NCBI GenBank assembly: GCA_000388065.2
Contig: KB932201.1
Reading direction: 5' to 3' (one strand)
Source of the DNA: Fonticula alba ATCC 38817
Lineage: Eukaryota > Protista > Nucleariida
DNA: 27,686 nucleotides
Position numbers and translations under genes: made by a program. The notes under the pieces were generated by a model. It had not been told where the DNA came from. It did no database searches and worked only from the letters and a program-made list of their open reading frames with translations. Shown here one piece after another: positions 1 through 26,976 of this stretch (position 1 is its first letter; every line of letters begins with the position of its first letter).

Positions 1-1603
1 CCCCCCCCCCCCCCCCCCGTGCCAGTGATGCAATCCGCAGCCTGACAAAATGGGCCGGCCCATCGAGCGCCGGGTCCGGGGCGGCCGGCAGCAGCGCCGG
101 GAGCGAGGCCCAAGTGCCGGACACCTCCGTGCGCGGCAAGGCCGCCGCAGGGCATTGCAGGCCTCCCCGCCCATACCTGTGCATCCCCCCCCCCCCCGCC
201 CGCCCCGGCGGCTGGTGGCAGTTAACCTTCGGGTGCACGGGGACAAGGAGCCTGGCGGTCGACTCGCGAGCACTCGGCCACCCGGCCCCTCTCGCGCCGT
301 GTGCGGCTGGGCGCCGGTTTGACTCGGTGAGACCGCGGACCTGGGGCAGCTCGGCGGGGGTGCGCACCAAAAAAAAGCCGCATATCCGCCTCTTCCGGCC
401 CATTTTTCTGTATGTCCCCCCCCCCCGGGGGGGGGGGGGGGGGGGCGGAGGCAGCGACAAGGCAGAGGCCGCCATTTCCCGCGGCCCTGAGAATTTGAAG
501 GAGATACTCCCCCCCCCCCCCCCCCCCCGGGTGGCCCTCAGGGGCGATGGCGAGGACTTCACCACGGACGCGTCCTGGCGTATGTCGCCCCCTCGGGCGG
601 CTGATATTCGGGGTTGCCCGGGCGGGGGCCGCGCCTCGAGAGCACGCGCGCGCATTGGGGGCTGGATTTCCGCGCGCGTGCGCGCCACGCGCACATGCGC
701 CGAGCCGGCCCCCTCGTCCGCCGTCCGTGTCCGGGGGCAAGGGCGGCCGGTTGTGTTCCTGCCTTGGCGCGGGCGGTGCACTCAACCGGATCCTGAGGTC
801 CAATCCCATCCCTCTTCCCCACGCCCCGCCCCCCGCGCCCCCCGCCGGTCGGGAGGCGAGGGGAGGGCCGCTTGGACCGAACACGGGCCCTGGTTCCCCC
901 TCCCCCCCCCCCCCATCCCCTGTGTACGCGCAACACGCGTGTTTCCGAAGGGAGAAACATGGCCGCCCGTGCGTGCGCCTGTGTCATATAATTATATTTT
1001 TTGTATCGCGCCCGCCCCCGTCCATATGCCCATCCTTTTTCACCGCCGCGGCCGGGGTAAAAATGCCGGGGAGGGGAAACGGCCTCCGCCGCCCGCTGGC
1101 CGCCGCCCGCGGTGTGCGCGAGTTTCGCGAGAGATGCCAACGCCCTCGGAATCACGCCGCCGCCAGCCTGAGACGGCAAGTCACACCATATGGTACCTGA
1201 TCACACAGTGGTGGCAGGCATTTCTCGCTGACCTGTGGGGAGAAGATCCCCTCAGAGGGACGCTAGCCAGATCTCTCCTTCTCTCTCTCTCCCCGCCCCT
1301 CATCTCCCCCCCCCCTAGCTCCGGCATCTGCCCGATCGCGCCTAGACTTCTTGCCCNNNNNNNNNNNNNNNNNNNNNNNNNNNNNNNNNNNNNNNNNNNN
1401 NNNNNNNNNNNNNNNNNNNNNNNNNNNNNNNNNNNNNNNNNNNNNNNNNNNNNNNNNNNNNNNNNNNNNNNNNNNNNNNNNNNNNNNNNNNNNNNNNNNN
1501 NNNNNNNNNNNNNNNNNNNNNNNNNNNNNNNNNNNNNNNNNNNNNNNNNCCCCCCCCCCCCCCACCAACTGACGTCCGTCATCTTGGTGGCCCCCCCTGG
1601 CAG

Positions 1604-10998: not shown

Positions 10999-11028
10999 GG
11001 TTAAGCATCCGGTTAAGCGTGACACGTG
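10999..11028. promoter_or_regulatory. Candidate divergent-promoter core: GGTTAAGC x2 plus CACGTG E-box
   Basis: GGTTAAGC at 10999-11006 and 11011-11018, CACGTG at 11023-11028, midway between the divergent ATGs at 10598 and 11566. Confidence 0.3.
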
Positions 11029-11220
11029 CCTGGATCACGGATACTTCTCCATGCGGCTGCCCCGAATGCAATCTCCCGGGCCCGCCTCAACTGGCCTGTT
11101 GGTGTCCGCGCGGCGTCGGCAGCAACGCACCCACGCCCCGCCCCGCCCCCGTCCGGCCCCGGTGCGCCCGGGGCACAATCCCCCCTGGGGTGGTCGGCCC
11201 GCGCGGTGCGCCGCCACGCA

Positions 11221-11222
<2 letters not shown>

Positions 11223-11251
<29 letters not shown>

Positions 11252-11280
11252 CACGCACACACATGCACACGCACGCGCAT
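11223..11280 (+). repeat. (CA)n microsatellite upstream of RRP12 (probable 5'UTR intron)
   Basis: Directly visible. Confidence 0.9.
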
Positions 11281-11565
11281 CCGCCCCGGCTCCGAAGCCA
11301 AAGCCCTCGCGGCGTCCGCACACCCCTCCCGCGACGACCTGTGTGTCGGAGGTGCATCGAACTGCGGAGGAGATCCCAAGAGGCCGACCAGCAATGCGGC
11401 CGCCCCCCCCCTCGCTTCCCGTTTAAGGCTGCCCTATCCTCCCTCCGGATTCCCTTCCACTCTTCAAGCCCCTCTTTTTCCTTTTGCTCCCCCCTCGACT
11501 CCCGCCCCTATCCCCTCCTACCCCTTCCTCCCCTTCCCTCCCCACCGGCCTCTCCCAACAGCACC

Positions 11566-14500
11566 ATGCCGCCCAAGCCCCAGACGGTCCGCCGGCGCTC
11601 GGCCCCGGCCAAGCCGATGGCCCTGACCAAGGAGGCACTTGCCCTGCATGACCGCATCCAAAATGAGATGTTCGAGGAGCAGAAGGAGCAGCTGGCTCTG
11701 CGCAAGCGCCTGGAGGCGCGCCGGCGCCTGTCCGGCCAGCCGGACTCCGATGATGAGGACCTCCTGCCGCTGGGCGGCAATGCCATGACCACTGACGACG
11801 GCGCCGCCGCCCCCTCGACCGGCGCCGCCGCGCCGACCGACCCGGCCGACCCGTTCGATGTCATCCGGCGCCAGCTCCACTCGACCCTGCCGAGCCACCG
11901 GAACAATGTGGCCATCCTGGCGGCCGTCGAGGAGACCATCGCCGCTCAGGGCTTCGACCGGACCCCGACCGCCTACTTCGGTGCCCTTGTGAGCCTGCTG
12001 GCCGGGCAGGTGGCCGAGGCCGATGCGCTGCCCGTCCGGGCGACCGGCGGTCGCCAGCGCCGCGGCAAGGCCCCACTCAACTCCAATGACGATGAGTCGG
12101 CCATCTGGAATGCGATTGTCCTGCTTCTGTCGCTGATCATCAGCCGGGTTGAGGCGTCGGTCCTCTGCGCTCGGTACGCCGACCTGGCGCAGCTCTTCTC
12201 CAAGGCCCTGGGCCACTATGTGGAGTCATCGGCCACCACGCGTGCCCTGTTGGAGTGTCTGGCTCGTCTGCTCGGGGCCATCGAGGCCCCCATGTGGACG
12301 CTGTCCACGTCCACCGCTCTGGTGGGCCAGATGGTCAGCCTGTGCATGGACCAGCGGCCGAAGGTCCGCCGCAAGGCGGTCGACACGCTGACCGCCCTGT
12401 ATGCCGGGCTTGGTCCGAATGCGGTGGCCAGCGCGCGGCCCATCTTCCACAAGGAAGTCGCGGCCCTCTTTGCCACGCTGCACACCGAGTACACCGCCCT
12501 GGCCCAGCAGGCGTCCATCGCCTCGGCCGCTCAGCAGGACCCCCTGAACAACCTGACCGCGGGCGATGACAACATGGAGGACGTCGAGGCCGGCAGCAAC
12601 CCGGCCATGGCCCTGCTCTCCAGCAAGCTCATGCACCTGATGCGTCTGCTGCAGGACATCTTCAAGGTACCGGCCGATTGCCTTCTTTCGCGTTGCCCAT
12701 TGCATGGTTGTCTCTTTGACGGCCCCGTGCCCCCTCCCCCGGTCGAGCCCTTTTTTGACATTGTGTGTTTCTCTCTCTCTCTCTCTCTCGGTCCTTTGTT
12801 CAGCATCTTGGCCGTTCCGATGATGCCTTCCTCATGAAGCCGCTGCTGGTTCTGGACGAGGTGTACCGCGGCCTGGAGGAGGATGAGCAGCCCCACTTGC
12901 AGAAGGAGATCGAGCAGACTCTGCAGGCCGGCTGCCTGTCCTTCGGCCCGGAGATGCTGCTGGCGTCGCTGCCGCTGAACATTCGCCGTTCGGAGATCGA
13001 GTCCGGCAAGGTCAGCCGCCCGTGGCTTCTCTACGTCATTCGCAACCACATTCCTCAGGGATCCTCGATGGCCTACTTTGTGCAGAACATCGTTTCTCTG
13101 GCGAACGACATGAAGGCGTGCGTCACCTGGTGATTTTTCTCTCTCCCTTTCTCTCTCCCTCTCTCCCTCTCTCCCTCTCTCCCTCTCTCCCTCTCTCCCC
13201 CTCCCCCTTTCTCTCCCTCTCTCTCCCCCNNNNNNNNNNNNNNNNNNNNNNNNNNNNNNNNNNNNNNNNNNNNNNNNNNNNNNNNNNNNNNNNNNNNNNN
13301 NNNNNNNNNNNNNNNNNNNNCTCTCTCTCTCCCTCTCTCCCCCTCTCTCTCTCCCCCTCTCTCTCTCCCTCTCTCCCTCTCCCTCTCTTTCTCTCCCTCT
13401 CTTCATGAATTGCCCTGACCTTCTCCCAACTCACATCTGTGCGTTTTCCAACTCCAGTGAGCAGGAGGCCCTGATCGCCAATGGCCAGCCCATGGTGGCC
13501 GTGCAGTTCCGCAGTCTCTTTTTGCAGCTGTGGGCCCTGTTCCCCGGGTTCTCCAAGCTCCCAAGCGATTTGGAGCACTTCCGCAACATCGCCCGCGATG
13601 TGGGCACCTTGATCCAGACGGAGGATGACCTGCTGATTGATGCGTGCCACGGGCTGCAGGCCCTGGTGTCTTCTGGCCTGGGTGCGTCGGAGGAGCGGGC
13701 GGCTCATGTCCGCGCGGTGCTCGGCCCCTTCGCCAAGAACTACATGCCGCTGCTCTTCAACCGGATTATGGGCGCGGCGTCGCAGTTCCAGGACCCGCTG
13801 GTTGGGACCATTCGCGAGTACTCGCGCCTGACGGATCCCGAGGTACATGCAAGCACATGCGCACGCCGGCGCCGCGCACGCGCGTGTGCCCCCCCCCCCC
13901 TCCCCCCCTCCCCGGACTGGGCATTTTGCTTGTCCCCTCCCCTCTCCCCCGTCGGGCTTTTATCTTTTTATTTTTATTTTTTTTCACCAACCAGCCGTAT
14001 GCGCTGGAATGTCCCCCTCTCGTGTCTCTCACCTTCTTCCCCTCCCTCCTCCCCCTCCCCTCGGCGTTAGCTTCTTGACTCCTTCGTTAGCCGGTGCATT
14101 GCTCGCCTGACCAGCGCCGAGTCCGACGACAACACTCGGGACATGATGCTCACCCTGTCGATCGCCATGTCCCCTTCGATGAACCTCGAGTCTAAGGCTC
14201 GCATTTTCCAGGCACTGCCGACCTTCCTGGCGTGCGAGGATGCCATGCTTCAGAAGCGCGCCTACCGGTGCCTGCTCACCGTGTCCGATAATGTCGGGCA
14301 TATGGTCATCAGTTCGGCGCAGGCCTCGGCCGTGCTCGGGTCCCTTCTGACCCTGGAGTCGGTCAGTGCCGGTGCCAAGCGCGACCGTCTGCGCTGCATG
14401 CTGGCTCTGCTTACGCGCATGGATGATCCGGCCTTCCTGGCGGCCGTGCCGTCTGTCATGCCGGAGGCCATCCTCGGCTGCAAGGAGGTCAACGAGAAGA

Positions 14501-15956
14501 CCCGCCGCACGTCCTACGACCTGCTGACCGATGTCGGCAAGCGCATGGCTCAGCTCGGCTCGACCCCCCTGTGCCTGGAGAACCCGGATGCCAGCCTGAA
14601 TGGCTTCTTCAAGATGACGATTGCCGGCCTGGCGGCCAACAGCCCGCACATGATCAGTGCCACGGTTTATGCCCTGTCGACCCTGGTCTTCCAGTTCTGT
14701 GGTACGTGTGGCCGGCTGTTTGTCTGGGTTTCGTCTTCCCATTGATCTTTTCTCCCTCCTCCCCTTTCTTCTTCCTCCTCTTCTTCCTGTTGATGCCGCG
14801 ATCCCTTCTCCACTGCTCACATTGGCCCCCCCCCCCCCCGACGCCGTGTCGCATTTCCATGCACTCACCTTCTCCTCTTCCCGTCCCTTGCTCCATGGTG
14901 ACAGATCAAATGGAGCTCAGCACCTTGTCGGTTGTCATCGACACCATCCTGCTGATCCTCAAGTCCAAGACCAAGGAGAATGTCAAGGCCGCCATCGGCT
15001 TTGTCAAGGTGATGGCCGTGCGGGTGCCGGCCGAGCGCCTGGGTGCCCACCTGCCGGGCATCGTCGAGGGCCTGCTGGTGTGGGCCGATGAGCACTCGCA
15101 TCACTTTAAGATTCGCGTGCGGGAGATCATCGAGCGCCTGGTGCGGAAGTTTGGTTACCAGATTATCGGCAACCTCATCCCGGCCGAGCACCAGAAGCTG
15201 CTGGACTACATCCGGAAGTATCGTGTTCGGGAGTCGGTCTTCGGCGAGGGCAACACCGCCGAGGACAATGAGGAGACCATGGCCTTCGACTCGTCGCTGT
15301 CCATCGGCGGCCGGTCGGCCCGGCGCCTGGCCTCCACCTCGACCCTGGGTCGGAAGCGCGGCCGCGGCGAGGAGGAGGATACCCTCGAGGGGCTGGAGGA
15401 TCTGGCCATCGAGACCGACAGCGAGGATGAGGCGGTGTCCGTGCACACCACCCGCACGGCCCGGTCCATGGCCCGGTCGCTTAAGTCCACTCAGTCCGCC
15501 AAGACCACCAAGACCACGGCCACCAACAAGACCTCCAAGTCGGTGGCCATGTCGGTGTCCGGCAAGTCGGTGTCCGGCAAGTCGGTGTCCGGCAAGTCGG
15601 TGTCCGGCAAGTCGGTGTCCGGCAAGTCGATGGCTGCTACCACCCGGTCCTCGGGGGCCCTGTCCACCATGAGCAAGTCTGTGCGTGGCAAGCGCGCGCC
15701 GCAGCCCACCCCCCTGCAGCGGGCCATGGAGGATGCCTCCAAGTACAAGTCCAAGCGTGGCTTCGGTGATGTCAAGATTGCCGACCAGCCCGACCCGTAT
15801 GCCTACCTGCCGCTGAACCCCATGGCCCTGTCCAAGCGCCGTGGTACCAAGCACAATGTCGAGATGCAGGATGCCCTGAGCGTCGCGCTCAAGAGCAACC
15901 CCCGCGGTGCCAAGGCTCGTGCCCTGCAGCCGGAGCGCAAGCGTCGCCGCAAGTGA
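11566..15956 (+). CDS. RRP12: Ribosomal RNA-processing protein 12 (NUC173 domain), 1160 aa
   Basis: Exons 11566-12666, 12804-13117, 13458-13842, 14071-14701, 14905-15956 (3483 nt, in frame). Recognised motifs: ILAAVEETI..TPTAYFGAL, DQRPKVRRKA, GPEMLLASLPLN..RPWLL, QLWALFPGF, KENVKAAIGFVKV and GDVK..PDPYAYLPL. Basic C-terminus KRRRK. Confidence 0.92.
13133..13402 (+). repeat. CT-rich low-complexity tract spanning an assembly gap (RRP12 intron 2)
   Basis: (CT)n/(CCCTCT)n on both sides of the N run at 13230-13320. Confidence 0.95.
15551..15629 (+). repeat. Coding 15-bp tandem repeat x5 encoding (SVSGK)5 in RRP12
   Basis: Five identical GTCGGTGTCCGGCAA units plus GTCG. Confidence 0.97.
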
Positions 15957-16313: not shown

Positions 16314-16469
16314 AGCCGCGAGACCCCCCCCCCCCCCTGAAAGCACAACGAGGGAGAGGACAAGCCGCAGATCAACAGAGGCATCTATGGAAGAAGGGGG
16401 GCAGGACACTCTTACTTTCTCATGCGATCGAGAAAGCTGTTGGTGAGGACGACTGGGCTCCTCCTGGGG

Positions 16470-16615
16470 TCAAGCTCCGGTAGGGGGGAGCCGGATCCAA
16501 AGTCCATCGAAGCGGGCCACTTGTTCCTGATCCGCAAGGATTTCCTTGCGCTCACGCAGAGCCGGCTTGAGAGCCTTATCGGCGAAGAGCTGGAACTGGT
16601 CATTGACATGACCTT

Positions 16616-16667
<52 letters not shown>

Positions 16668-18378
16668 CCACACGCATGTAGCAAAGTATCTGTGTTAGTT
16701 TTGATGGGCAAATGACGCGACAAGCGGCCGAGAGGGGTGGGTCAGGAGGAAAGGCAAGTATTGCCAGCAGCCATCGTACCATAGACTCGTGCACCGCGAG
16801 AACCCGGCGTAGCATTGCCATACGGCATACAGGTAGCGGCGATCGGCCGGGACCGGATAAAGCCATCGGCGTCCACTTCCCGGTTGTCGGCCATATAAGC
16901 CAGGAGACCGGTGTACGAGTCACCACCATATGGCCCGATGTCGGCCTCCTTCCACCAGAGGCTTCGGAAAGTGTCGAAGGTGCCGTGCGCCGGAAGGACC
17001 AAGCGCTGATCCTCGTCCTCGGGCGGGGCCGTGTGCTGGTAGGCATAGAACTTGTGCATGTCACCCCAGGAGGCATCCAGGGGGTGCCCGGCGGCGGCCA
17101 CGGCATCGGCCGCGCGCAGGACCGATTCCACCGCTGCCGTCAGGTCGGAGAGAGTGTGCGGCGTGTTGAGCGGATCCTCCGCCAGCCAGGGCACCAAAAA
17201 GTACACCCCACGCTGCTTGCGCAGGTACATCTCAAACAGGAAGGACCCAGGCGATACGGCATCGTATGTCCGATCCCAGGAGGTCCAGATGGCATGGATC
17301 TCGGCCAGACGGGGATCGGCCTGCGAGCCGCGATTGGCCAGCTCCTGGCCAATGGCCTCCAGGAGCTCGTCCAAATAGTGCAATGCCGCCTCCTTCAACG
17401 TCGAGTGCTTGTGCCGGACCATGGTGTCAAAGTCAAAGCGGTCCTCCATGTGGAGCAGGCGAACCGACACTTGGGGGCTAAGCACACATGCCAGGTCAGA
17501 AAGGAAGCCCCGGAGCCGGAATGTACCTGCACACATGGGCGCAAGGGTCTTCTTGATGTGCCACGAGGGCGTTTGGTGTTGTGTGTTCGCGTCGGGCCCA
17601 TGCGTGTGTATGGATGCATGTATGTACGTGTGTGCGAGCAGGAAGCACGCACCGGAAACTCATGTAAGGCTTCATGCTCACGTAAGCCGGGAAGTTGGCA
17701 GGATCCAGGGTCGGGAGAAAGAGCGGGAAGGTCGCGGTCCAGGGAGACTCATTGGCGTTGTGGACCCAACCAGAGGCAGGGTCTTGGATGTGCGGCAGCT
17801 CGGAGAGCGGGTGAAGCTCGGTCCAGAAGGTGCGACTGGTGTTACCCGGCACGGCCATATTCCAGTAGTTGTAGTCACCAAAGGAACGGACGGGCACGAA
17901 GCCGTTGAATTGGTTGAGAATCGACCCATCGGCCGAAGCCGCCACAACTGTGAGGGAAGCCAGCTGGGTGGTGTACAAGCCAAGGGGAAGGAGGGAGGAG
18001 AAGACGGAGGAATGTCAGAGGGTATGCCACGGGTCAGGAGGTTCTCGAAGTGACAGGGCGAAGAAGGAGGCAAGAGGTAAAAGCGCACCTGGAGTTGGTC
18101 AATGGCCGCACGGAACTGAGCCATGCTGCGCGCTCGACCCATGTCCCACCATTGCTTGATATAGCCGGCACGATCGGCACCAGCACGGCGCTATGTTGCC
18201 AGAGGCAGGAAGGCATCCGGGAGTCGGTCAGGAGATGGCGGACAAAGCGAACGGCGGAAAAAAAAGAACACAGCAAGGGACCAGCGTACCAGGACGGCCA
18301 CCTTATTGTGCTTGCGATTGACCACATGGCCGTGGATGGTCTTCTCCACAACCACGGTGTGGGCCTCGTAAGATCTAA

Positions 18379-18451
<73 letters not shown>

Positions 18452-19877
18452 TGTGTGGGTATGGGTATGGGTGGATGAGAGCGAGAAAGAGAAAGCAGGA
18501 GAGGGAAAATGAGAGGGAGAAGGTCATGGTGACCAGGAAAAGGGCCCAGAGAGCTGGGAAAAAGGCCCGTAGAGGGGGCCAATGTCGCACCCGTCATCCA
18601 GCAAGACCTTGAAGGGAAACTCCTCCACTTGCATTTGCATTTCCACACCATCAAAGAGGTATGTGGAGTTGTCGTGCGACAGTTCCACCTCATATACGGT
18701 CCAGGGGGTGATGATGTTTACGGTGTGCGTCCTGAATGGGACAGGGCACGCGGGTTAGCTTGCGCATATGGCTGGGCGTGGCCCACATGGGCTGCCAAGT
18801 TTGACGGCGAGACGGGGGGCGCACCAGCCGACATAATCGTTGAAGGCAATCTGCAAGTTGGGCCAGGACAGGATGCCCGCGCCATAAAGCTGGGAACAGG
18901 GGAAAATGAGCGCGGCAGAAAGGATACAGAGTGAGCGAGACGCCTCAGCGGGCAAGGTAATCCATGGTGGCCTTTGGTCGACGCACATTGACATTTTCCG
19001 ACTCGATGACAAAGTGCGCCTCGTACCAGCGGAAAATGCTGACGAAGGGCAAATGCGGATTCTGGTTGAGTAGAGTGATGACGTCCGGGGCCACCTTCGG
19101 GCCATTCATGGCCCAGCTGCTGGGATGTCAATGAAAGCAACCTCGAGCCGGCCAGGTCTACAGGGAACACCGATTCAGGAACACCCGTCGGGGAAAGGCA
19201 AGGAGGCGTGGCGGTGGCGGAGGAGGAGAGGGAGGAGCGGGCACGTACGCATTCGAGCCGAAGTGCTCCCAGTGCTCCTCGGGGATTTGCCGGATGTCAT
19301 GCAGGTAGTCGACGTAGGCCGAGTAGTGGCGAGTGGGCGTCTCATTAGCCATGCTGGGCAGGGGGCGGAGGAGGAGGGGAAAGCATGTGAGAGAGGGCAT
19401 GGGAGGGGGCATGGGGGGAGGAAGGTGGTTTCCGGGGGCGGAAAATTGTGCGATAGCGGCACGGCGATCACACGGCAGCGCACCGGAAGTAGTCTGGCTC
19501 CTCAGAGGCCCCGTCAGCCGAGGGGGACCACCACTGGGCCTTCTCATTGCCGCTCCAGTAGGCATAGAAGTAGTGAATGCGCACGGTGCTCTTCATGATG
19601 TCGAGCGCCGAAACCGGCATGACCAATGTCGTGTTGAAGGGGGCCGTGAGCAGGTCGTCCGGGAACTGGCCAAAGTAGTGGTTGAAGCCAGCCGCAAAGT
19701 ACTCCAGCTGCTGCACTGTTTCCGGGTGCTGCTTGGCAAATAGATCCTCCGCCACGTTGGGGATGTCATTGGCCCACACAAGTGCGTCAGATTCCTGATC
19801 CGAGAGGAGAGAGCGAGTCAGAGCTTGAAGAGGACACAGGGCCGAAATGGATGTCCATATGTGCATGCATGCATGTA

Positions 19878-19974
<97 letters not shown>

Positions 19975-20144
19975 NNNNNNNNNNNNNNNNNNNNNNNNNN
20001 NNNNNNNNNNNNNNNNNNNNNNNNNNNNNNNNNNNNNNNNNNNNNNNNNNNNNNNNNNNNNNNNNNNNNNNNNNNNNNNNNNNNNNNNNNNNNNNNNNNN
20101 NNNNNNNNNNNNNNNNNNNNNNNNNNNNNNNNNNNNNNNNNNNN

Positions 20145-20207
<63 letters not shown>

Positions 20208-20645
20208 GGTGGGCGGGTGCATGTGTGACGCACAATCCACTCCGCGCCCCAATACTCAGACGCACGGCCGCGTGCGGTGGCGATGAAACGGATAACCTCC
20301 TGGCCATGATCCCGGGCCTGAGCATAGCCATAGGCGAAGCTCTGTGCGCCAGGAGGAAAAAGGGAAGATGAGATTGGTCAAGATCAGCATCAAGGCGGGG
20401 TGTGGGTTCGGGCGGCGAAAGGACGCGCCCACACGCACCAGGTCCTTGGTAGAATTAGCGAAGATATGAGGCACGCCCCAGGAATCCCAGATGATCTCCG
20501 CATCGATTTGGTCCAGAGGGCGTGTGCGGTTGGTCAGGCCGGCAGCCGGCCGGCAAAACACCCCGAGCAGAGCCAGCAGCAAGACCAGCAGCAGCGACAG
20601 GCCTGACGCCCGAGGGGCCGCACGGGGGGGGAGGGCCGGCGCCAT
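16470..20645 (-). CDS. Secreted peptidase S45 Ntn-hydrolase (glutaryl-7-ACA/penicillin/AHL acylase family), 796 aa precursor
   Basis: 12 exons: 20645-20439, 20341-20234, 19794-19484, 19353-19249, 19116-18987, 18889-18825, 18731-18591, 18374-18290, 18190-18089, 17963-17653, 17477-16795, 16612-16470 (2391 nt, in frame, all GT-AG). Motifs: IIWDSWGVPHIFA, YGYAQARDH, ARGRASEYWG, FG-SNAWA (nucleophile Ser242, codon 19256-19254), QNPHL, WYEAH, HTVN, IHGHV, FNG, HNANESPW, PYGNATPG, HVNDQ. Colinear with the recalled cephalosporin acylase sequence. Confidence 0.92.
16621..16666 (-). repeat. (CA)23 in acylase intron 11
   Basis: (TG)23 on the + strand. Confidence 0.95.
18380..18447 (-). repeat. (CA)34 in acylase intron 7
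   Basis: (TG)34 on the + strand. Confidence 0.95.
19882..20205 (-). repeat. Long (CA)n in acylase intron 2, spanning an assembly gap
   Basis: (GT)n on both sides of the N run at 19975-20143. Confidence 0.95.
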
Positions 20646-21383
20646 GGTCTCGTCCGCTTGGCTCGAGTGCCGGGGAGGAGGAATCGCCAAAAGGATGGGA
20701 GAAAGGGCCTGTCCAAGCACGAGAGGGATTGGGACAAGAGGAGAAGGGAAGAAAGACAAAAGAGGAGGAGGAGGAGGAGGAGGAAGAAAACCTCGACAGG
20801 AGCCAGGAATCATCCAAGGGAAAGGGGCGCATGTTCACCCCGCAGATGCAGGCCCATCCGGGCCGGCGCCCCACCCCGGTTTCAGGCAGCCCGTTGTGTT
20901 CCGATCGAATCCCCCCCCCCGGTCTGGCCACTCGGCCGCCCTGGGGGGGGGGGGGGGGGACGGGAATCTTGCCGGTGGGGACATACACGAGCGAGATGGT
21001 ACACGCACCTGGCCCTGCTCTGGCGGGCGAGCACGTGCGCCTGCGTGCGTTTATCTCCGGATCCGGAGGAGTGAGATCGCCCCCGGCCGTGGCCAATACC
21101 CCCACCGTCTGCCGCCCGAAAAATAATACCCTTGTCTGGGCCGGTCCGTGGGCAGCGGCCCGAGCCGCGCCCCCTTGGTTCCGAGACCCGATCACGCAAT
21201 GCCTCTCTCTGCCCAGATAGGCGCCAGCCGCGATCCTTCGGCCGCCGTGGGGCCAATGTCGCATGTGGCCCGAGGGCAGATACACACAGGAGGGCGCATG
21301 TTCATTTGCTTGGCCCTGCTCCCCCGGGGACGTCTCGTCTATTCTTGCGACACATGCCGGAGGGCCTCTCCCGAGCCCGGATC

Positions 21384-21679
21384 TCAAAGCTCCTGGCGCG
21401 AGGCGGGGTGGGCCGACTCGGGCGACTCATCTGGCGCGTCCTCCGATTCGGCACCCGACGGAGAGGGAGAGGGCGCTTGCGGCGAGGGCAGCATTCCTCG
21501 GTCACGATGCCCGCCCAGATCCCCGGGAAACAGGGTATCAATGATATTCTGGAGGGCGTCCAGCTCCTCGTCGGTGAGGTCTTCAGCCAGCAGAGTGCGG
21601 ATGGCATGGCGATCGAGGGCCGCCCCTCCCAGGGGATTGGGCCTGTGTGNNNNNNNNNNNNNNNNNNNNNNNNNNNNNN

Positions 21680-24593: not shown

Positions 24594-24637
24594 CTGTGCG
24601 GGAGNNNNNNNNNNCCCCCCCCCGTCCTCCGGAACAG

Positions 24638-26483: not shown

Positions 26484-26976
26484 GTATGCCGCATTTCCTT
26501 CGCCCCCCCCCCCCCCCCGCCCACCTCTGACCNNNNNNNNNNNNNNNNNNNNNNNNNNNNNNNNNNNNNNNNNNNNNNNNNNNNNNNNNNNNNNNNNNNN
26601 CCCCCCCCTCCCCCTGCCCATCACGGCTGGCTAATTCCCTCGCTGGGCACTTTCAGCGTCAGTTGTATCGGGGGGCCCGCGGACCGATCGATGTTGCTGC
26701 CCGGTGTAGATGCAGAGCTGACATGGAGGCGGGTCGATTATTCCAGTACATCCGGTCACGCCGGAGTGACATCACATGGGGACCGACGGTGCCAACGATT
26801 GGGGCTATATGTGTGCCACCAGCGGATTCCGCCGCGGTCTTGACCCACAGCACGGCTCTCTTTCTGTACTTCTTCCCTCTTGCTCCTCCCCCCCTCCCCC
26901 TTCTCCTCCTCCTCCTCGCCTCTTTCTTCGTCCCTCTGATCTGCCCGGAAGGAAGCACCCGTGTGGCCCCTCGCTG

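What the first reader, a model, noticed from the sequence alone, without database searches (positions are those of the whole stretch)
16470..20645. Bacterial-type beta-lactam/AHL acylase (peptidase S45) domesticated as a secreted eukaryotic enzyme
Seen: a complete 796-aa precursor with signal peptide, alpha chain, spacer and beta chain, and intact catalytic positions (Ser beta1, NPH His, HTVN oxyanion region, NANES Asn). Established: S45 acylases (glutaryl-7-ACA acylase, penicillin G acylase, PvdQ/AHL acylases, aculeacin acylase) are predominantly bacterial, self-cleave, and deacylate beta-lactams, acyl-homoserine lactones or lipopeptides. Inference: horizontally acquired and used by a bacterivorous protist to quench prey quorum signals, detoxify acylated antibiotics or lipopeptides, or digest prey in phagolysosomes. 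This is the best candidate in the window for an undescribed system.
Basis: partly seen in the sequence, partly recalled or inferred. Interest (0 to 1): 0.85.

Follow-up and report, generated by a model that had tools for sequence, protein, structure and literature searches.

The report
Self-cutting acylase shared by prey-eating protists
The amoeba Fonticula alba carries a real, expressed, 12-exon gene for a bacterial-style self-cutting acylase, but its closest relatives are in other prey-eating protists, so it is one member of an old eukaryotic branch rather than a private recent gift from bacteria.

Summary
Window 20645-16470 (minus strand) is a 12-exon gene with 11 GT..AG introns. It encodes an 801-aa peptidase S45 (penicillin-amidase family) precursor, not the 796 aa reported: RNA supports a last-intron donor 15 nt further on. 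The product is letter for letter the public protein H696_00733 of Fonticula alba.

RNA contigs from four runs join every exon. They splice 20234 to 19794 across the N gap, so the gap (19975-20144) lies inside a (TG)n repeat in intron 2 and no coding sequence is missing.

The Gly241-Ser242 cleavage site, His265, Val313 and Asn489 are intact. The predicted fold matches the cephalosporin acylase precursor 1KEH.

The nearest relatives (40-47% identity) are eukaryotic:
- Rhodelphis, Lentomonas, Diphylleia and Gromia transcripts;
- intron-bearing environmental genes flanked by eukaryotic genes.

All form one clade (100/100 support) with shared insertions. The clade is nested among bacterial acylases that are 32-37% identical.

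This points to one old bacterial origin followed by residence in phagotrophic eukaryotes, not a Fonticula-specific acquisition. Vertical descent and eukaryote-to-eukaryote transfer cannot be told apart.

The substrate is unknown. The arginine that binds glutaryl-7-ACA is a glutamine here.

S45 transfers into eukaryotes are already reported, so interest is modest.

The parts
16470..20645 (-). Whole coding region of the S45 acylase gene (12 exons, 801 codons plus stop)
   Evidence: Spliced translation is identical to P0001 / H696_00733. RNA contigs span it.
20646..20751 (-). 5' untranslated region seen in RNA contigs
   Evidence: Contig pieces reach 20751.
20439..20645 (-). Exon 1: start codon, signal peptide (about aa 1-36) and start of the alpha chain
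   Evidence: Joint 20439/20341. Pfam PF01804 profile positions 1-23. Helix 15-30 then disorder in the model.
20234..20341 (-). Exon 2 (aa 70-105)
   Evidence: Joints. Pfam profile positions 24-56.
19795..20233 (-). Intron 2, which holds the assembly gap (N 19975-20144) inside a (TG)n microsatellite
   Evidence: RNA joint 20233/4 to 19793/4 in all four runs. GT..AG ends. TG runs at 19882-19973 and 20145-20204.
19484..19794 (-). Exon 3 (alpha chain; aa 106-208)
   Evidence: Joints. Pfam profile positions 59-133.
19249..19353 (-). Exon 4: long linker and the Gly241|Ser242 self-cleavage site (Ser242 codon 19256-19254)
   Evidence: Joints. S242 is invariant and G241 nearly so and they align to the Gly169-Ser170 site of 1KEH.
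18987..19116 (-). Exon 5: start of the beta chain with the NPH motif (His265 codon 19055-19053)
18825..18889 (-). Exon 6 (Gln300, codon 18853-18851, in place of Arg-beta57 of glutaryl acylase)
18591..18731 (-). Exon 7: HTVN motif (Val313/Asn314, 18721-18716)
18290..18374 (-). Exon 8
   Evidence: Joint 18290/18190 and contig coordinates 1358-1444.
18089..18190 (-). Exon 9
17653..17963 (-). Exon 10: NANES motif with the oxyanion Asn489 (codon 17753-17751)
   Evidence: Pfam PF01804 scores 54.9 bits on this exon's reading frame. Mapping to Asn-beta244.
16780..17477 (-). Exon 11 (aa 522-754; Asp708 in place of Glu-beta455)
16613..16779 (-).
   Evidence: Contig coordinates 243 to 246 fit only the donor at 16780 and the acceptor at 16612.
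16470..16612 (-). Exon 12: C-terminal HVNDQ region and stop codon
16366..16469 (-). 3' untranslated region seen in RNA contigs
   Evidence: Contig pieces start at 16366-16380.

Best explanation
This is the single detectable Fonticula alba copy of a eukaryote-specific branch of peptidase family S45 (N-terminal-nucleophile acylases), closest to the class I cephalosporin/glutaryl acylase type.

Shown:
- The gene is transcribed and spliced from 12 exons.
- The product keeps every residue needed for self-cleavage and catalysis.
- It folds in silico like the solved precursor.
- Its nearest relatives are genes of other phagotrophic eukaryotes, which together form one clade nested among bacterial acylases.

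Inferred mechanism:
- A signal peptide takes the roughly 88-kDa precursor into the secretory or endolysosomal route.
- The chain cuts itself between Gly241 and Ser242, and probably trims part of the unusually long linker.
- The freed amino group of Ser242 then acts as base for its own hydroxyl.
- Asn489 and the backbone of Val313 form the oxyanion hole, and His265 assists.
- The enzyme hydrolyses an amide between an acyl chain and an amine.

Inferred history: one old transfer from a bacterium into a eukaryote. The gene was then retained, or passed between eukaryotes, in lineages that eat bacteria, and it gained introns in each lineage.

Inferred role: breakdown or disarming of N-acylated bacterial compounds (acyl-homoserine lactones, lipopeptides, acylated siderophore precursors or similar) in the phagosome or the surrounding medium. 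It is unlikely to be a glutaryl-7-ACA specialist, because the carboxylate-binding Arg-beta57 is Gln300.
For: Gene structure and expression: RNA contigs in 4 runs with 11 GT..AG joints and 0 mismatches. The spliced product equals P0001.

Family:
- PF01804.
- phmmer E = 1e-87 to the cephalosporin acylase precursor 1KEH, against 6e-34 to PvdQ.
- AlphaFold2 pLDDT 91.3 and pTM 0.90.
- Foldseek top hit 1KEH with target TM 0.90.

Catalytic residues are invariant (G241 in at least 90%) in 53 sequences.

Eukaryotic relatives:
- EukProt Rhodelphis, Lentomonas, Diphylleia and Gromia.
- L001 carries two tandem intron-bearing copies beside an intron-split Hsc70.
- L007-L010 carry an intron-bearing copy between Brix, Nop53, galactosyltransferase and Pin1-type genes.

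Tree: the eukaryote-type clade has 100/100 support. Its sister P0034 comes from a bacterial MAG with compact bacterial gene context.

Shared insertions:
- Linker between D170 and S242: median 68 residues in eukaryotes against 33.5 in bacteria.
- G660-P684: 14 or more against 12 or fewer.
- N743-H756: 9-12 against 7 in most.

The best bacterial genome hits are only 32-37% identical. Intron 1 is at the same codon and phase in Fonticula and in the environmental lineage A. All relatives start with a hydrophobic leader.
Against: - No biochemical data exist for any eukaryotic member, so self-cleavage, location and substrate are inferences from bacterial homologues.
- Four of the named eukaryotic relatives are transcriptome-only, so contamination cannot be formally excluded for each one, although they cluster with intron-bearing genomic copies.
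- Several environmental rows counted as eukaryotic (P0028, P0384, P0281, P0282, P0382) are assigned only by tree position.
- Relationships inside the eukaryotic clade are unresolved. An AU test does not reject Fonticula+Diphylleia (p = 0.59), so vertical and lateral spread cannot be separated.
- The tree is unrooted. A bacterial origin rests on the huge bacterial diversity around a single eukaryotic clade.
- The homologue searches were not exhaustive for eukaryotes. The word filter saturated with bacteria, and the one exhaustive search used only the last large exon.
Confidence: 0.75

Rival explanations
1. Recent, Fonticula-specific horizontal transfer from a bacterium, later domesticated.
For: The family is overwhelmingly bacterial. 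JGI labels the hits 'acyl-homoserine-lactone acylase', and hundreds of bacterial hits appear. Only one NCBI eukaryote, Fonticula, appears in the hit lists.
Against: - The best bacterial identity is 32-37%, while eukaryotic relatives reach 40-47%.
- There is a 100/100 eukaryotic clade with shared insertions.
- The gene has 11 spliceosomal introns, one shared with another eukaryotic lineage.
Confidence: 0.05
2. Ancient vertical inheritance: the gene was present in an early eukaryotic ancestor, perhaps the last common one, and was lost in most lineages, surviving in scattered phagotrophs.
For: One well-supported clade holds members of Opisthokonta, CRuMs, Archaeplastida, Discoba and Rhizaria. An AU test does not reject the species-tree-like pairing Fonticula+Diphylleia.
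Against: - The distribution is extremely patchy and requires very many losses.
- Internal branches are unresolved, and the free trees do not follow the species tree.
- Intron positions are mostly lineage-specific.
Confidence: 0.25
3. Contamination or assembly artefact: a bacterial gene mis-assembled into a eukaryotic scaffold.
For: The locus contains an assembly gap and several microsatellites.
Against: Eleven GT..AG introns are removed in RNA contigs. The gene has a eukaryotic neighbour, RRP12, in convergent orientation 514 bp away, and lies on a 4.77-Mb contig. The gap is intronic.
Confidence: 0.01
4. A true beta-lactam acylase (glutaryl-7-ACA or penicillin G acylase) that protects the amoeba from antibiotics.
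For: The closest solved structures are glutaryl-7-ACA acylases.
Against: - Arg-beta57, which holds the glutaryl carboxylate in those enzymes (knowledge of the family), is Gln300 in nearly all eukaryotic members. Bacterial sequences that resemble the solved enzyme (P0264, P0267) keep Arg.
- Similarity to penicillin G acylases is weak (E about 1e-12).
- Removing the side chain of a beta-lactam does not open the ring, so it is a poor detoxification route (general knowledge).
Confidence: 0.07

Closest known systems
Class I cephalosporin (glutaryl-7-ACA) acylase of Pseudomonas/Brevundimonas, precursor structure 1KEH and mature 1FM2
   Same: - Same family (PF01804, MEROPS S45) and same predicted fold (target TM 0.90).
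- Same order of signal peptide, alpha chain, spacer and beta chain.
- The same Gly|Ser self-cleavage site, and the same His-beta23, Val-beta70 and Asn-beta244 equivalents.
   Different: - Only 27-29% identical.
- The linker before the cleavage site is about 35-40 residues longer.
- There are extra insertions (a 6-11 residue one before LPxxG, a 3-5 residue one before HVNDQ, and a Fonticula-only insertion of about 12 residues near aa 718-735).
- Gln300 replaces Arg-beta57 and Asp708 replaces Glu-beta455.
- The gene is eukaryotic with 11 introns.
Bacterial 'acylase' homologues of Cyanobacteria, Verrucomicrobiota, Acidobacteriota, Latescibacterota and Gemmatimonadota (uncharacterised; e.g. L012, L016, P0159 Fischerella, P0034)
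   Same: They are the nearest bacterial sequences (32-37% identity over nearly full length). They have the same catalytic set, including Asp at the Glu-beta455 position, and most also lack Arg-beta57.
   Different: They have short linkers and lack the eukaryote-type insertions. They are intron-less genes in compact bacterial contexts.
AHL acylases PvdQ (2WYB) and MacQ (4YF9/5C9I)
   Same: Same family, fold and mechanism. MacQ acts on both AHLs and beta-lactams, according to the PDB titles.
   Different: Much more distant (E = 6e-34 and 2e-21; about 20% identity). No evidence here for the deep hydrophobic acyl pocket of PvdQ.
Published S45 'penicillin amidase' transfer candidates in other eukaryotes: Gonapodya prolifera (PMC5567314), Mnemiopsis leidyi ML02771a (PMC6005172), Rhynchopus euleeides (bioRxiv 10.64898/2026.01.29.702485), Willaertia magna (PMC7285305)
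   Same: The same Pfam family in a eukaryotic genome, read as being of bacterial origin. None has been characterised biochemically.
   Different: Their sequences could not be fetched with these tools, so it is unknown whether they belong to the clade described here or are separate transfers. None turned up in the hit lists.

Membership tests
Peptidase S45 / Pfam PF01804 (penicillin amidase family) | Significant match to the family profile | tested here: met
   The reading frame containing exon 10 alone scores 54.9 bits (cut-off 21.3). Exons 1-3 match profile positions 1-133 in order. PF01804 is precomputed for the whole protein.
Peptidase S45 / Pfam PF01804 (penicillin amidase family) | Nucleophile Ser (or Thr/Cys) that becomes the N-terminus of the beta chain, preceded by Gly | tested here: met
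   Across 53 sequences S242 is invariant and G241 is present in at least 90% (one bacterial row has Ala). The pair aligns to the Gly169-Ser170 site of 1KEH, whose nucleophile position reads Ala in the deposited chain, and S242 aligns to residue 1 of the mature beta chain 1FM2_B.
Peptidase S45 / Pfam PF01804 (penicillin amidase family) | Oxyanion-hole Asn and the conserved His near the nucleophile | tested here: met
   N489 corresponds to Asn-beta244, H265 to His-beta23 and V313 to Val-beta70 by the 1KEH alignment. N489 and H265 are invariant.
Peptidase S45 / Pfam PF01804 (penicillin amidase family) | Ntn-hydrolase alpha-beta-beta-alpha core fold | tested here: met
   Predicted only: AlphaFold2 pLDDT 91.3 and Foldseek to 1KEH with E = 4.6e-63 and target TM 0.90.
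Peptidase S45 / Pfam PF01804 (penicillin amidase family) | Autoproteolytic maturation into alpha and beta chains, and amidase activity | not testable with these tools
   Needs expressed protein.
Glutaryl-7-ACA (class I cephalosporin) acylase in the narrow sense | Arg-beta57 binding the glutaryl carboxylate, and Glu-beta455 | tested here: not met
   Gln300 and Asp708 stand at these positions. Control bacterial sequences P0264 and P0267 have Arg and Glu.
AHL acylases of the PvdQ/QuiP/MacQ type | Closer sequence kinship to PvdQ/MacQ than to other S45 subfamilies | tested here: not met
   PvdQ E = 6e-34 and MacQ E = 2e-21, against E = 1e-87 for cephalosporin acylase. AHL activity itself was not tested.
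Gene recently transferred from bacteria to this species | Nearest relatives are bacterial and the sequence nests within one bacterial group | tested here: not met
   The nearest relatives are eukaryotic, in a eukaryote-type clade with 100/100 support.
Gene of bacterial ancestry (old transfer) | The eukaryotic clade is nested within bacterial diversity | tested here: met
   A single eukaryotic clade has the bacterial sister P0034 and lies inside a large bacterial radiation. The tree is unrooted, so direction is inferred from distribution.

The most novel reading that the evidence does not exclude
These sequences define an undescribed, eukaryote-specific S45 subfamily: signal peptide, a roughly doubled alpha/beta linker, three fixed insertions, and Gln in place of the glutaryl-binding Arg. 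The subfamily would date back to early eukaryotes and be kept only by phagotrophs in at least five major groups (Opisthokonta, CRuMs, Archaeplastida, Discoba, Rhizaria). It would be a piece of an ancestral prey-processing toolkit that deacylates bacterial signals or lipopeptides.
Probability: 0.25. Interest if true: 0.6.

Novelty: new member of a known kind. Interest (0 to 1): 0.38.

Why it matters
The gene is ordinary as an enzyme family and is already in public databases, and bacterial-type S45 genes in eukaryotes have been reported before.

What is new is the company it keeps. There is a coherent eukaryotic clade with its own sequence signatures, found so far only in organisms that engulf prey. 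No eukaryotic S45 enzyme has a known substrate.

If the clade's enzyme acts on acyl-homoserine lactones, lipopeptides or siderophore precursors, it would be a concrete molecular link between phagotrophy and interference with bacterial chemistry. It would also be a useful marker for how bacterial genes settle and spread among protists.

For annotation, the work fixes the gene model at 801 aa and shows that the assembly gap is harmless.

Tried and rejected
- The first Pfam call failed on wrong frame coordinates and was corrected.
- Word-indexed protein searches with the full protein and with a profile of eukaryotic members were saturated by bacterial candidates. They did not even return some members of the query alignment, so they cannot be used to count eukaryotic holders.
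- A linker-restricted search added only two further environmental hits and no named eukaryote.
- The ESM Atlas look-up returned only bacterial clusters.
- Exact-sequence contig look-ups for the EukProt proteins found nothing, as expected for transcriptomes.
- Synteny between Fonticula and the environmental loci was looked for and not seen. The neighbours are RRP12 here, and Hsc70 or Brix/Nop53 there.
- Intron-position sharing turned out weak: only intron 1 is clearly shared with lineage A. A second intron in the linker lies within one codon but in poorly aligned sequence. None is shared with lineage C.
- An attempt to use the gene tree to choose between vertical and lateral spread failed: the AU test gave p = 0.59.
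- Contamination and pseudogene readings were considered and rejected.
- I could not fetch the Mnemiopsis, Gonapodya, Acanthamoeba, Naegleria/Willaertia or Rhynchopus S45 sequences to place them.
Full report
**What is in the sequence**

On the minus strand between 20645 and 16470 there is a chain of open segments that match the penicillin-amidase profile PF01804 in order. Contigs of four public RNA-derived runs (two samples, 2012) lie on the stretch without a mismatch. They skip eleven segments whose ends are CT..AC on the plus strand, that is GT..AG on the gene's strand.

Nine joints were listed outright. Two more, inside dinucleotide repeats, were dropped by the tool's repeat filter. I recovered them from the contig coordinates and from the requirement for GT..AG and an open frame.

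The resulting 12-exon CDS translates to 801 residues. It is identical to a database protein, 'hypothetical protein H696_00733 [Fonticula alba]', which UniRef calls 'Penicillin amidase'. Earlier notes of this scan also name the genome as Fonticula alba, and the exact protein match confirms it. The transcript carries about 106 nt of 5' and 104 nt of 3' untranslated sequence.

**The gap**

The N run 19975-20144 lies in intron 2 (20233-19795), between two (TG)n runs. All four RNA contigs join exon 2 to exon 3 across it. The Pfam profile runs from position 56 at the end of exon 2 to position 59 at the start of exon 3. No exon is missing and the frame is continuous. The only unknown is the true length of a microsatellite.

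The RNA contig fits only the donor at 16780 with the acceptor at 16612, which gives 801 aa.

**What the protein is**

The full protein matches the precursor of class I cephalosporin (glutaryl-7-ACA) acylase 1KEH at E = 1e-87. It matches PvdQ at 6e-34, MacQ at 2e-21 and penicillin G acylases at about 1e-12.

An AlphaFold2 model built on 53 homologues has mean pLDDT 91.3 and pTM 0.90. Confidence is lower only in the leader, in the linker (residues about 190-220, pLDDT 65-89), in one loop (about 670-680, pLDDT about 61) and at the extreme C-terminus. Foldseek puts 1KEH first, with target TM 0.90.

From the 1KEH alignment:

| Fonticula residue | Cephalosporin acylase equivalent |
|---|---|
| Gly241\|Ser242 | self-cleavage site; Ser-beta1 |
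| His265 | His-beta23 |
| Val313 | Val-beta70 |
| Asn489 | Asn-beta244 |

Ser242, His265 and Asn489 are invariant in the 53-sequence alignment. Gly241 is present in at least 90% of rows and Val313 in most.

Two positions differ from the solved enzyme. Gln300 stands where Arg-beta57 holds the glutaryl carboxylate, and Asp708 stands where Glu-beta455 is. Two bacterial sequences that resemble the solved enzyme (P0264 Sphingobium, P0267 Alteromonas) keep Arg and Glu, which validates the mapping. So the catalytic machinery is intact, but the acyl pocket is not that of a glutaryl acylase.

The N-terminus has basic residues, then a Leu-rich core at 15-30, then CRPAAG. It looks like a signal peptide, and all relatives, eukaryotic and bacterial, start the same way. 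There is no C-terminal hydrophobic anchor. The protein has eight N-x-S/T sequons.

**Who its relatives are**

An exhaustive HMMER search with the largest exon and word-indexed searches with the full protein gave a small set of sequences at 40-47% identity, followed by hundreds of bacterial proteins at 30-37%. The closer set is eukaryotic.

- Exact-sequence look-ups name Rhodelphis marinus (P0005), Lentomonas sp. LEN2 (P0003), Diphylleia rotans (P0014) and Gromia sphaerica (P0007, P0370), all from EukProt transcriptomes.
- Metagenome scaffold L001/L002 (GC 64%) carries two tandem copies. Each is interrupted by GT..AG introns, and they lie next to an intron-split cytosolic Hsc70-type gene. L006 repeats this arrangement.
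- Contigs L007-L010 (up to 56 kb) carry a copy with three introns between Brix, Nop53, galactosyltransferase, protein-kinase and Pin1-type genes.
- P0151 and P0009/P0273 sit alone on mRNA-sized contigs of 61% and 38% GC.

The best matches in 185,579 bacterial and archaeal species genomes are 32-37% identical. They are mostly Nostocales and other Cyanobacteria, with some Verrucomicrobiota, Acidobacteriota, Latescibacterota, Gemmatimonadota and Fraserbacteria.

**Tree and signatures**

The tree used 56 rows: 18 eukaryote-type and 38 bacterial representatives, thinned at 62% identity. I dropped two long-branch bacterial rows (P0039, P0035). Three eukaryotic rows were stitched from tblastn segments.

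- The careful IQ-TREE run (LG+C20+F+G4) recovers all eukaryote-type rows as one clade with 100/100 support.
- Diphylleia branches first.
- Fonticula groups with environmental lineages A (L001, P0151, P0154) and C (L007) at 99/92 (quick trees agree). The bootstrap had not fully settled, so these values are rough.
- The sister is P0034, encoded on a bacterial MAG contig with glycosyltransferases, M42 peptidases and a histidine kinase.

Independent of the tree, the eukaryotic sequences share length differences:

| Stretch | Eukaryotic | Bacterial |
|---|---|---|
| D170-S242 (includes the linker) | 51-76 residues, median 68 | 23-56 residues, median 33.5 |
| G660-P684 | 14-23 | 9-12 |
| N743-H756 | 9-12 in most | 7 in all but one (6) |
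| After His278 | +2 residues in most | none |

Diphylleia has the fewest of these features, which fits its early position.

**History**

A recent private transfer into Fonticula does not fit these data. One acquisition from bacteria by some eukaryote, followed by long residence, does fit.

The gene has 11 introns in 2.4 kb of coding sequence. Another first-stage note remarks that this is denser than in the neighbouring genes, which I did not measure.

Intron 1 is at the same codon boundary and phase in Fonticula and in both lineage-A copies. The other introns are lineage-specific.

Whether the clade spread vertically with many losses or by transfer among eukaryotes cannot be decided. Free trees do not follow the species tree, but the AU test does not reject Fonticula+Diphylleia (p = 0.59).

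No second Fonticula copy appeared in any hit list, and no other acylase note exists for this genome in the scan. This suggests a single copy but does not prove it.

**Function**

By homology, the precursor should enter the secretory route, cut itself at Gly241|Ser242 and act as a serine N-terminal-nucleophile amidohydrolase.

Every named holder is a phagotroph, so a role in handling N-acylated bacterial compounds is plausible. That is an inference and nothing here tests it. JGI's label 'acyl-homoserine-lactone acylase' on the environmental relatives comes from the source's annotation and has not been tested.

**Comparison with the literature**

- Gonapodya prolifera: S45 genes read as bacterial transfers, in a paper that calls it the only fungus with the family (PMC5567314).
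- Mnemiopsis leidyi ML02771a (PMC6005172).
- Willaertia magna (PMC7285305).

I found no paper that mentions the Fonticula gene as an acylase or that describes the clade reported here. The library is incomplete, however, and I could not place the published sequences.

**Verdict**

This is a new member of a known kind, with a modestly interesting twist in the shape of a eukaryote-wide, phagotroph-associated subfamily.

Noticed in passing
window 11026-15956 (+): The neighbouring gene is RRP12 (HEAT_RRP12_N, E = 1.5e-23). It is convergent with the acylase gene, with stop codons 514 bp apart. Its C-terminal region holds a perfect (KSVSG)n peptide repeat around 15550-15650.
   Followed up: partly
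window 16620-16665, 18380-18447, 19882-19973, 20145-20204: Three of the eleven introns (11, 7 and 2) carry long (TG)n/(GT)n microsatellites. One of them caused the assembly gap, and these repeats also made the read-laying tool drop two joints.
   Followed up: yes
L001 700-7300 (ENA GROS21 metagenome scaffold; also L002, L006): An unidentified GC-rich eukaryote has two tandem intron-bearing copies of this acylase directly upstream of a cytosolic Hsc70 gene. P0151 (72-77% identical) looks like the mRNA of a related organism.
   Followed up: partly
L007-L010 (ENA metagenome contigs up to 56 kb): A second unidentified eukaryote has one copy with three short introns between Brix, Nop53, galactosyltransferase and Pin1-type genes. 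The organism could probably be identified from these neighbours.
   Followed up: no
L005 1-116: The 5' end of the low-GC mRNA-like contig that encodes P0009 looks to me like a fragment of large-subunit rRNA. That would suggest a chimeric metatranscriptome contig.
   Followed up: no
window 16470-20645 compared with neighbours: Another first-stage note (s1-066270) says this gene is about four times more intron-dense than its neighbours. Eleven introns are confirmed here, and RRP12 next door has long uninterrupted ORFs, but the neighbours' introns were not measured.
   Followed up: partly
window 1357-1549, 13230-13320, 21650-21679, 24605-24614, 26533-26600: There are five further assembly gaps in the window. 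The one at 13230-13320 falls inside the RRP12 region.
   Followed up: no
L011 6001-8601: A bacterial relative (P0301, 866 aa, on a 7.25-Mb contig) sits beside a non-ribosomal peptide synthetase and ExbBD genes. That context would suit an acylase acting on a lipopeptide or siderophore precursor.
   Followed up: no
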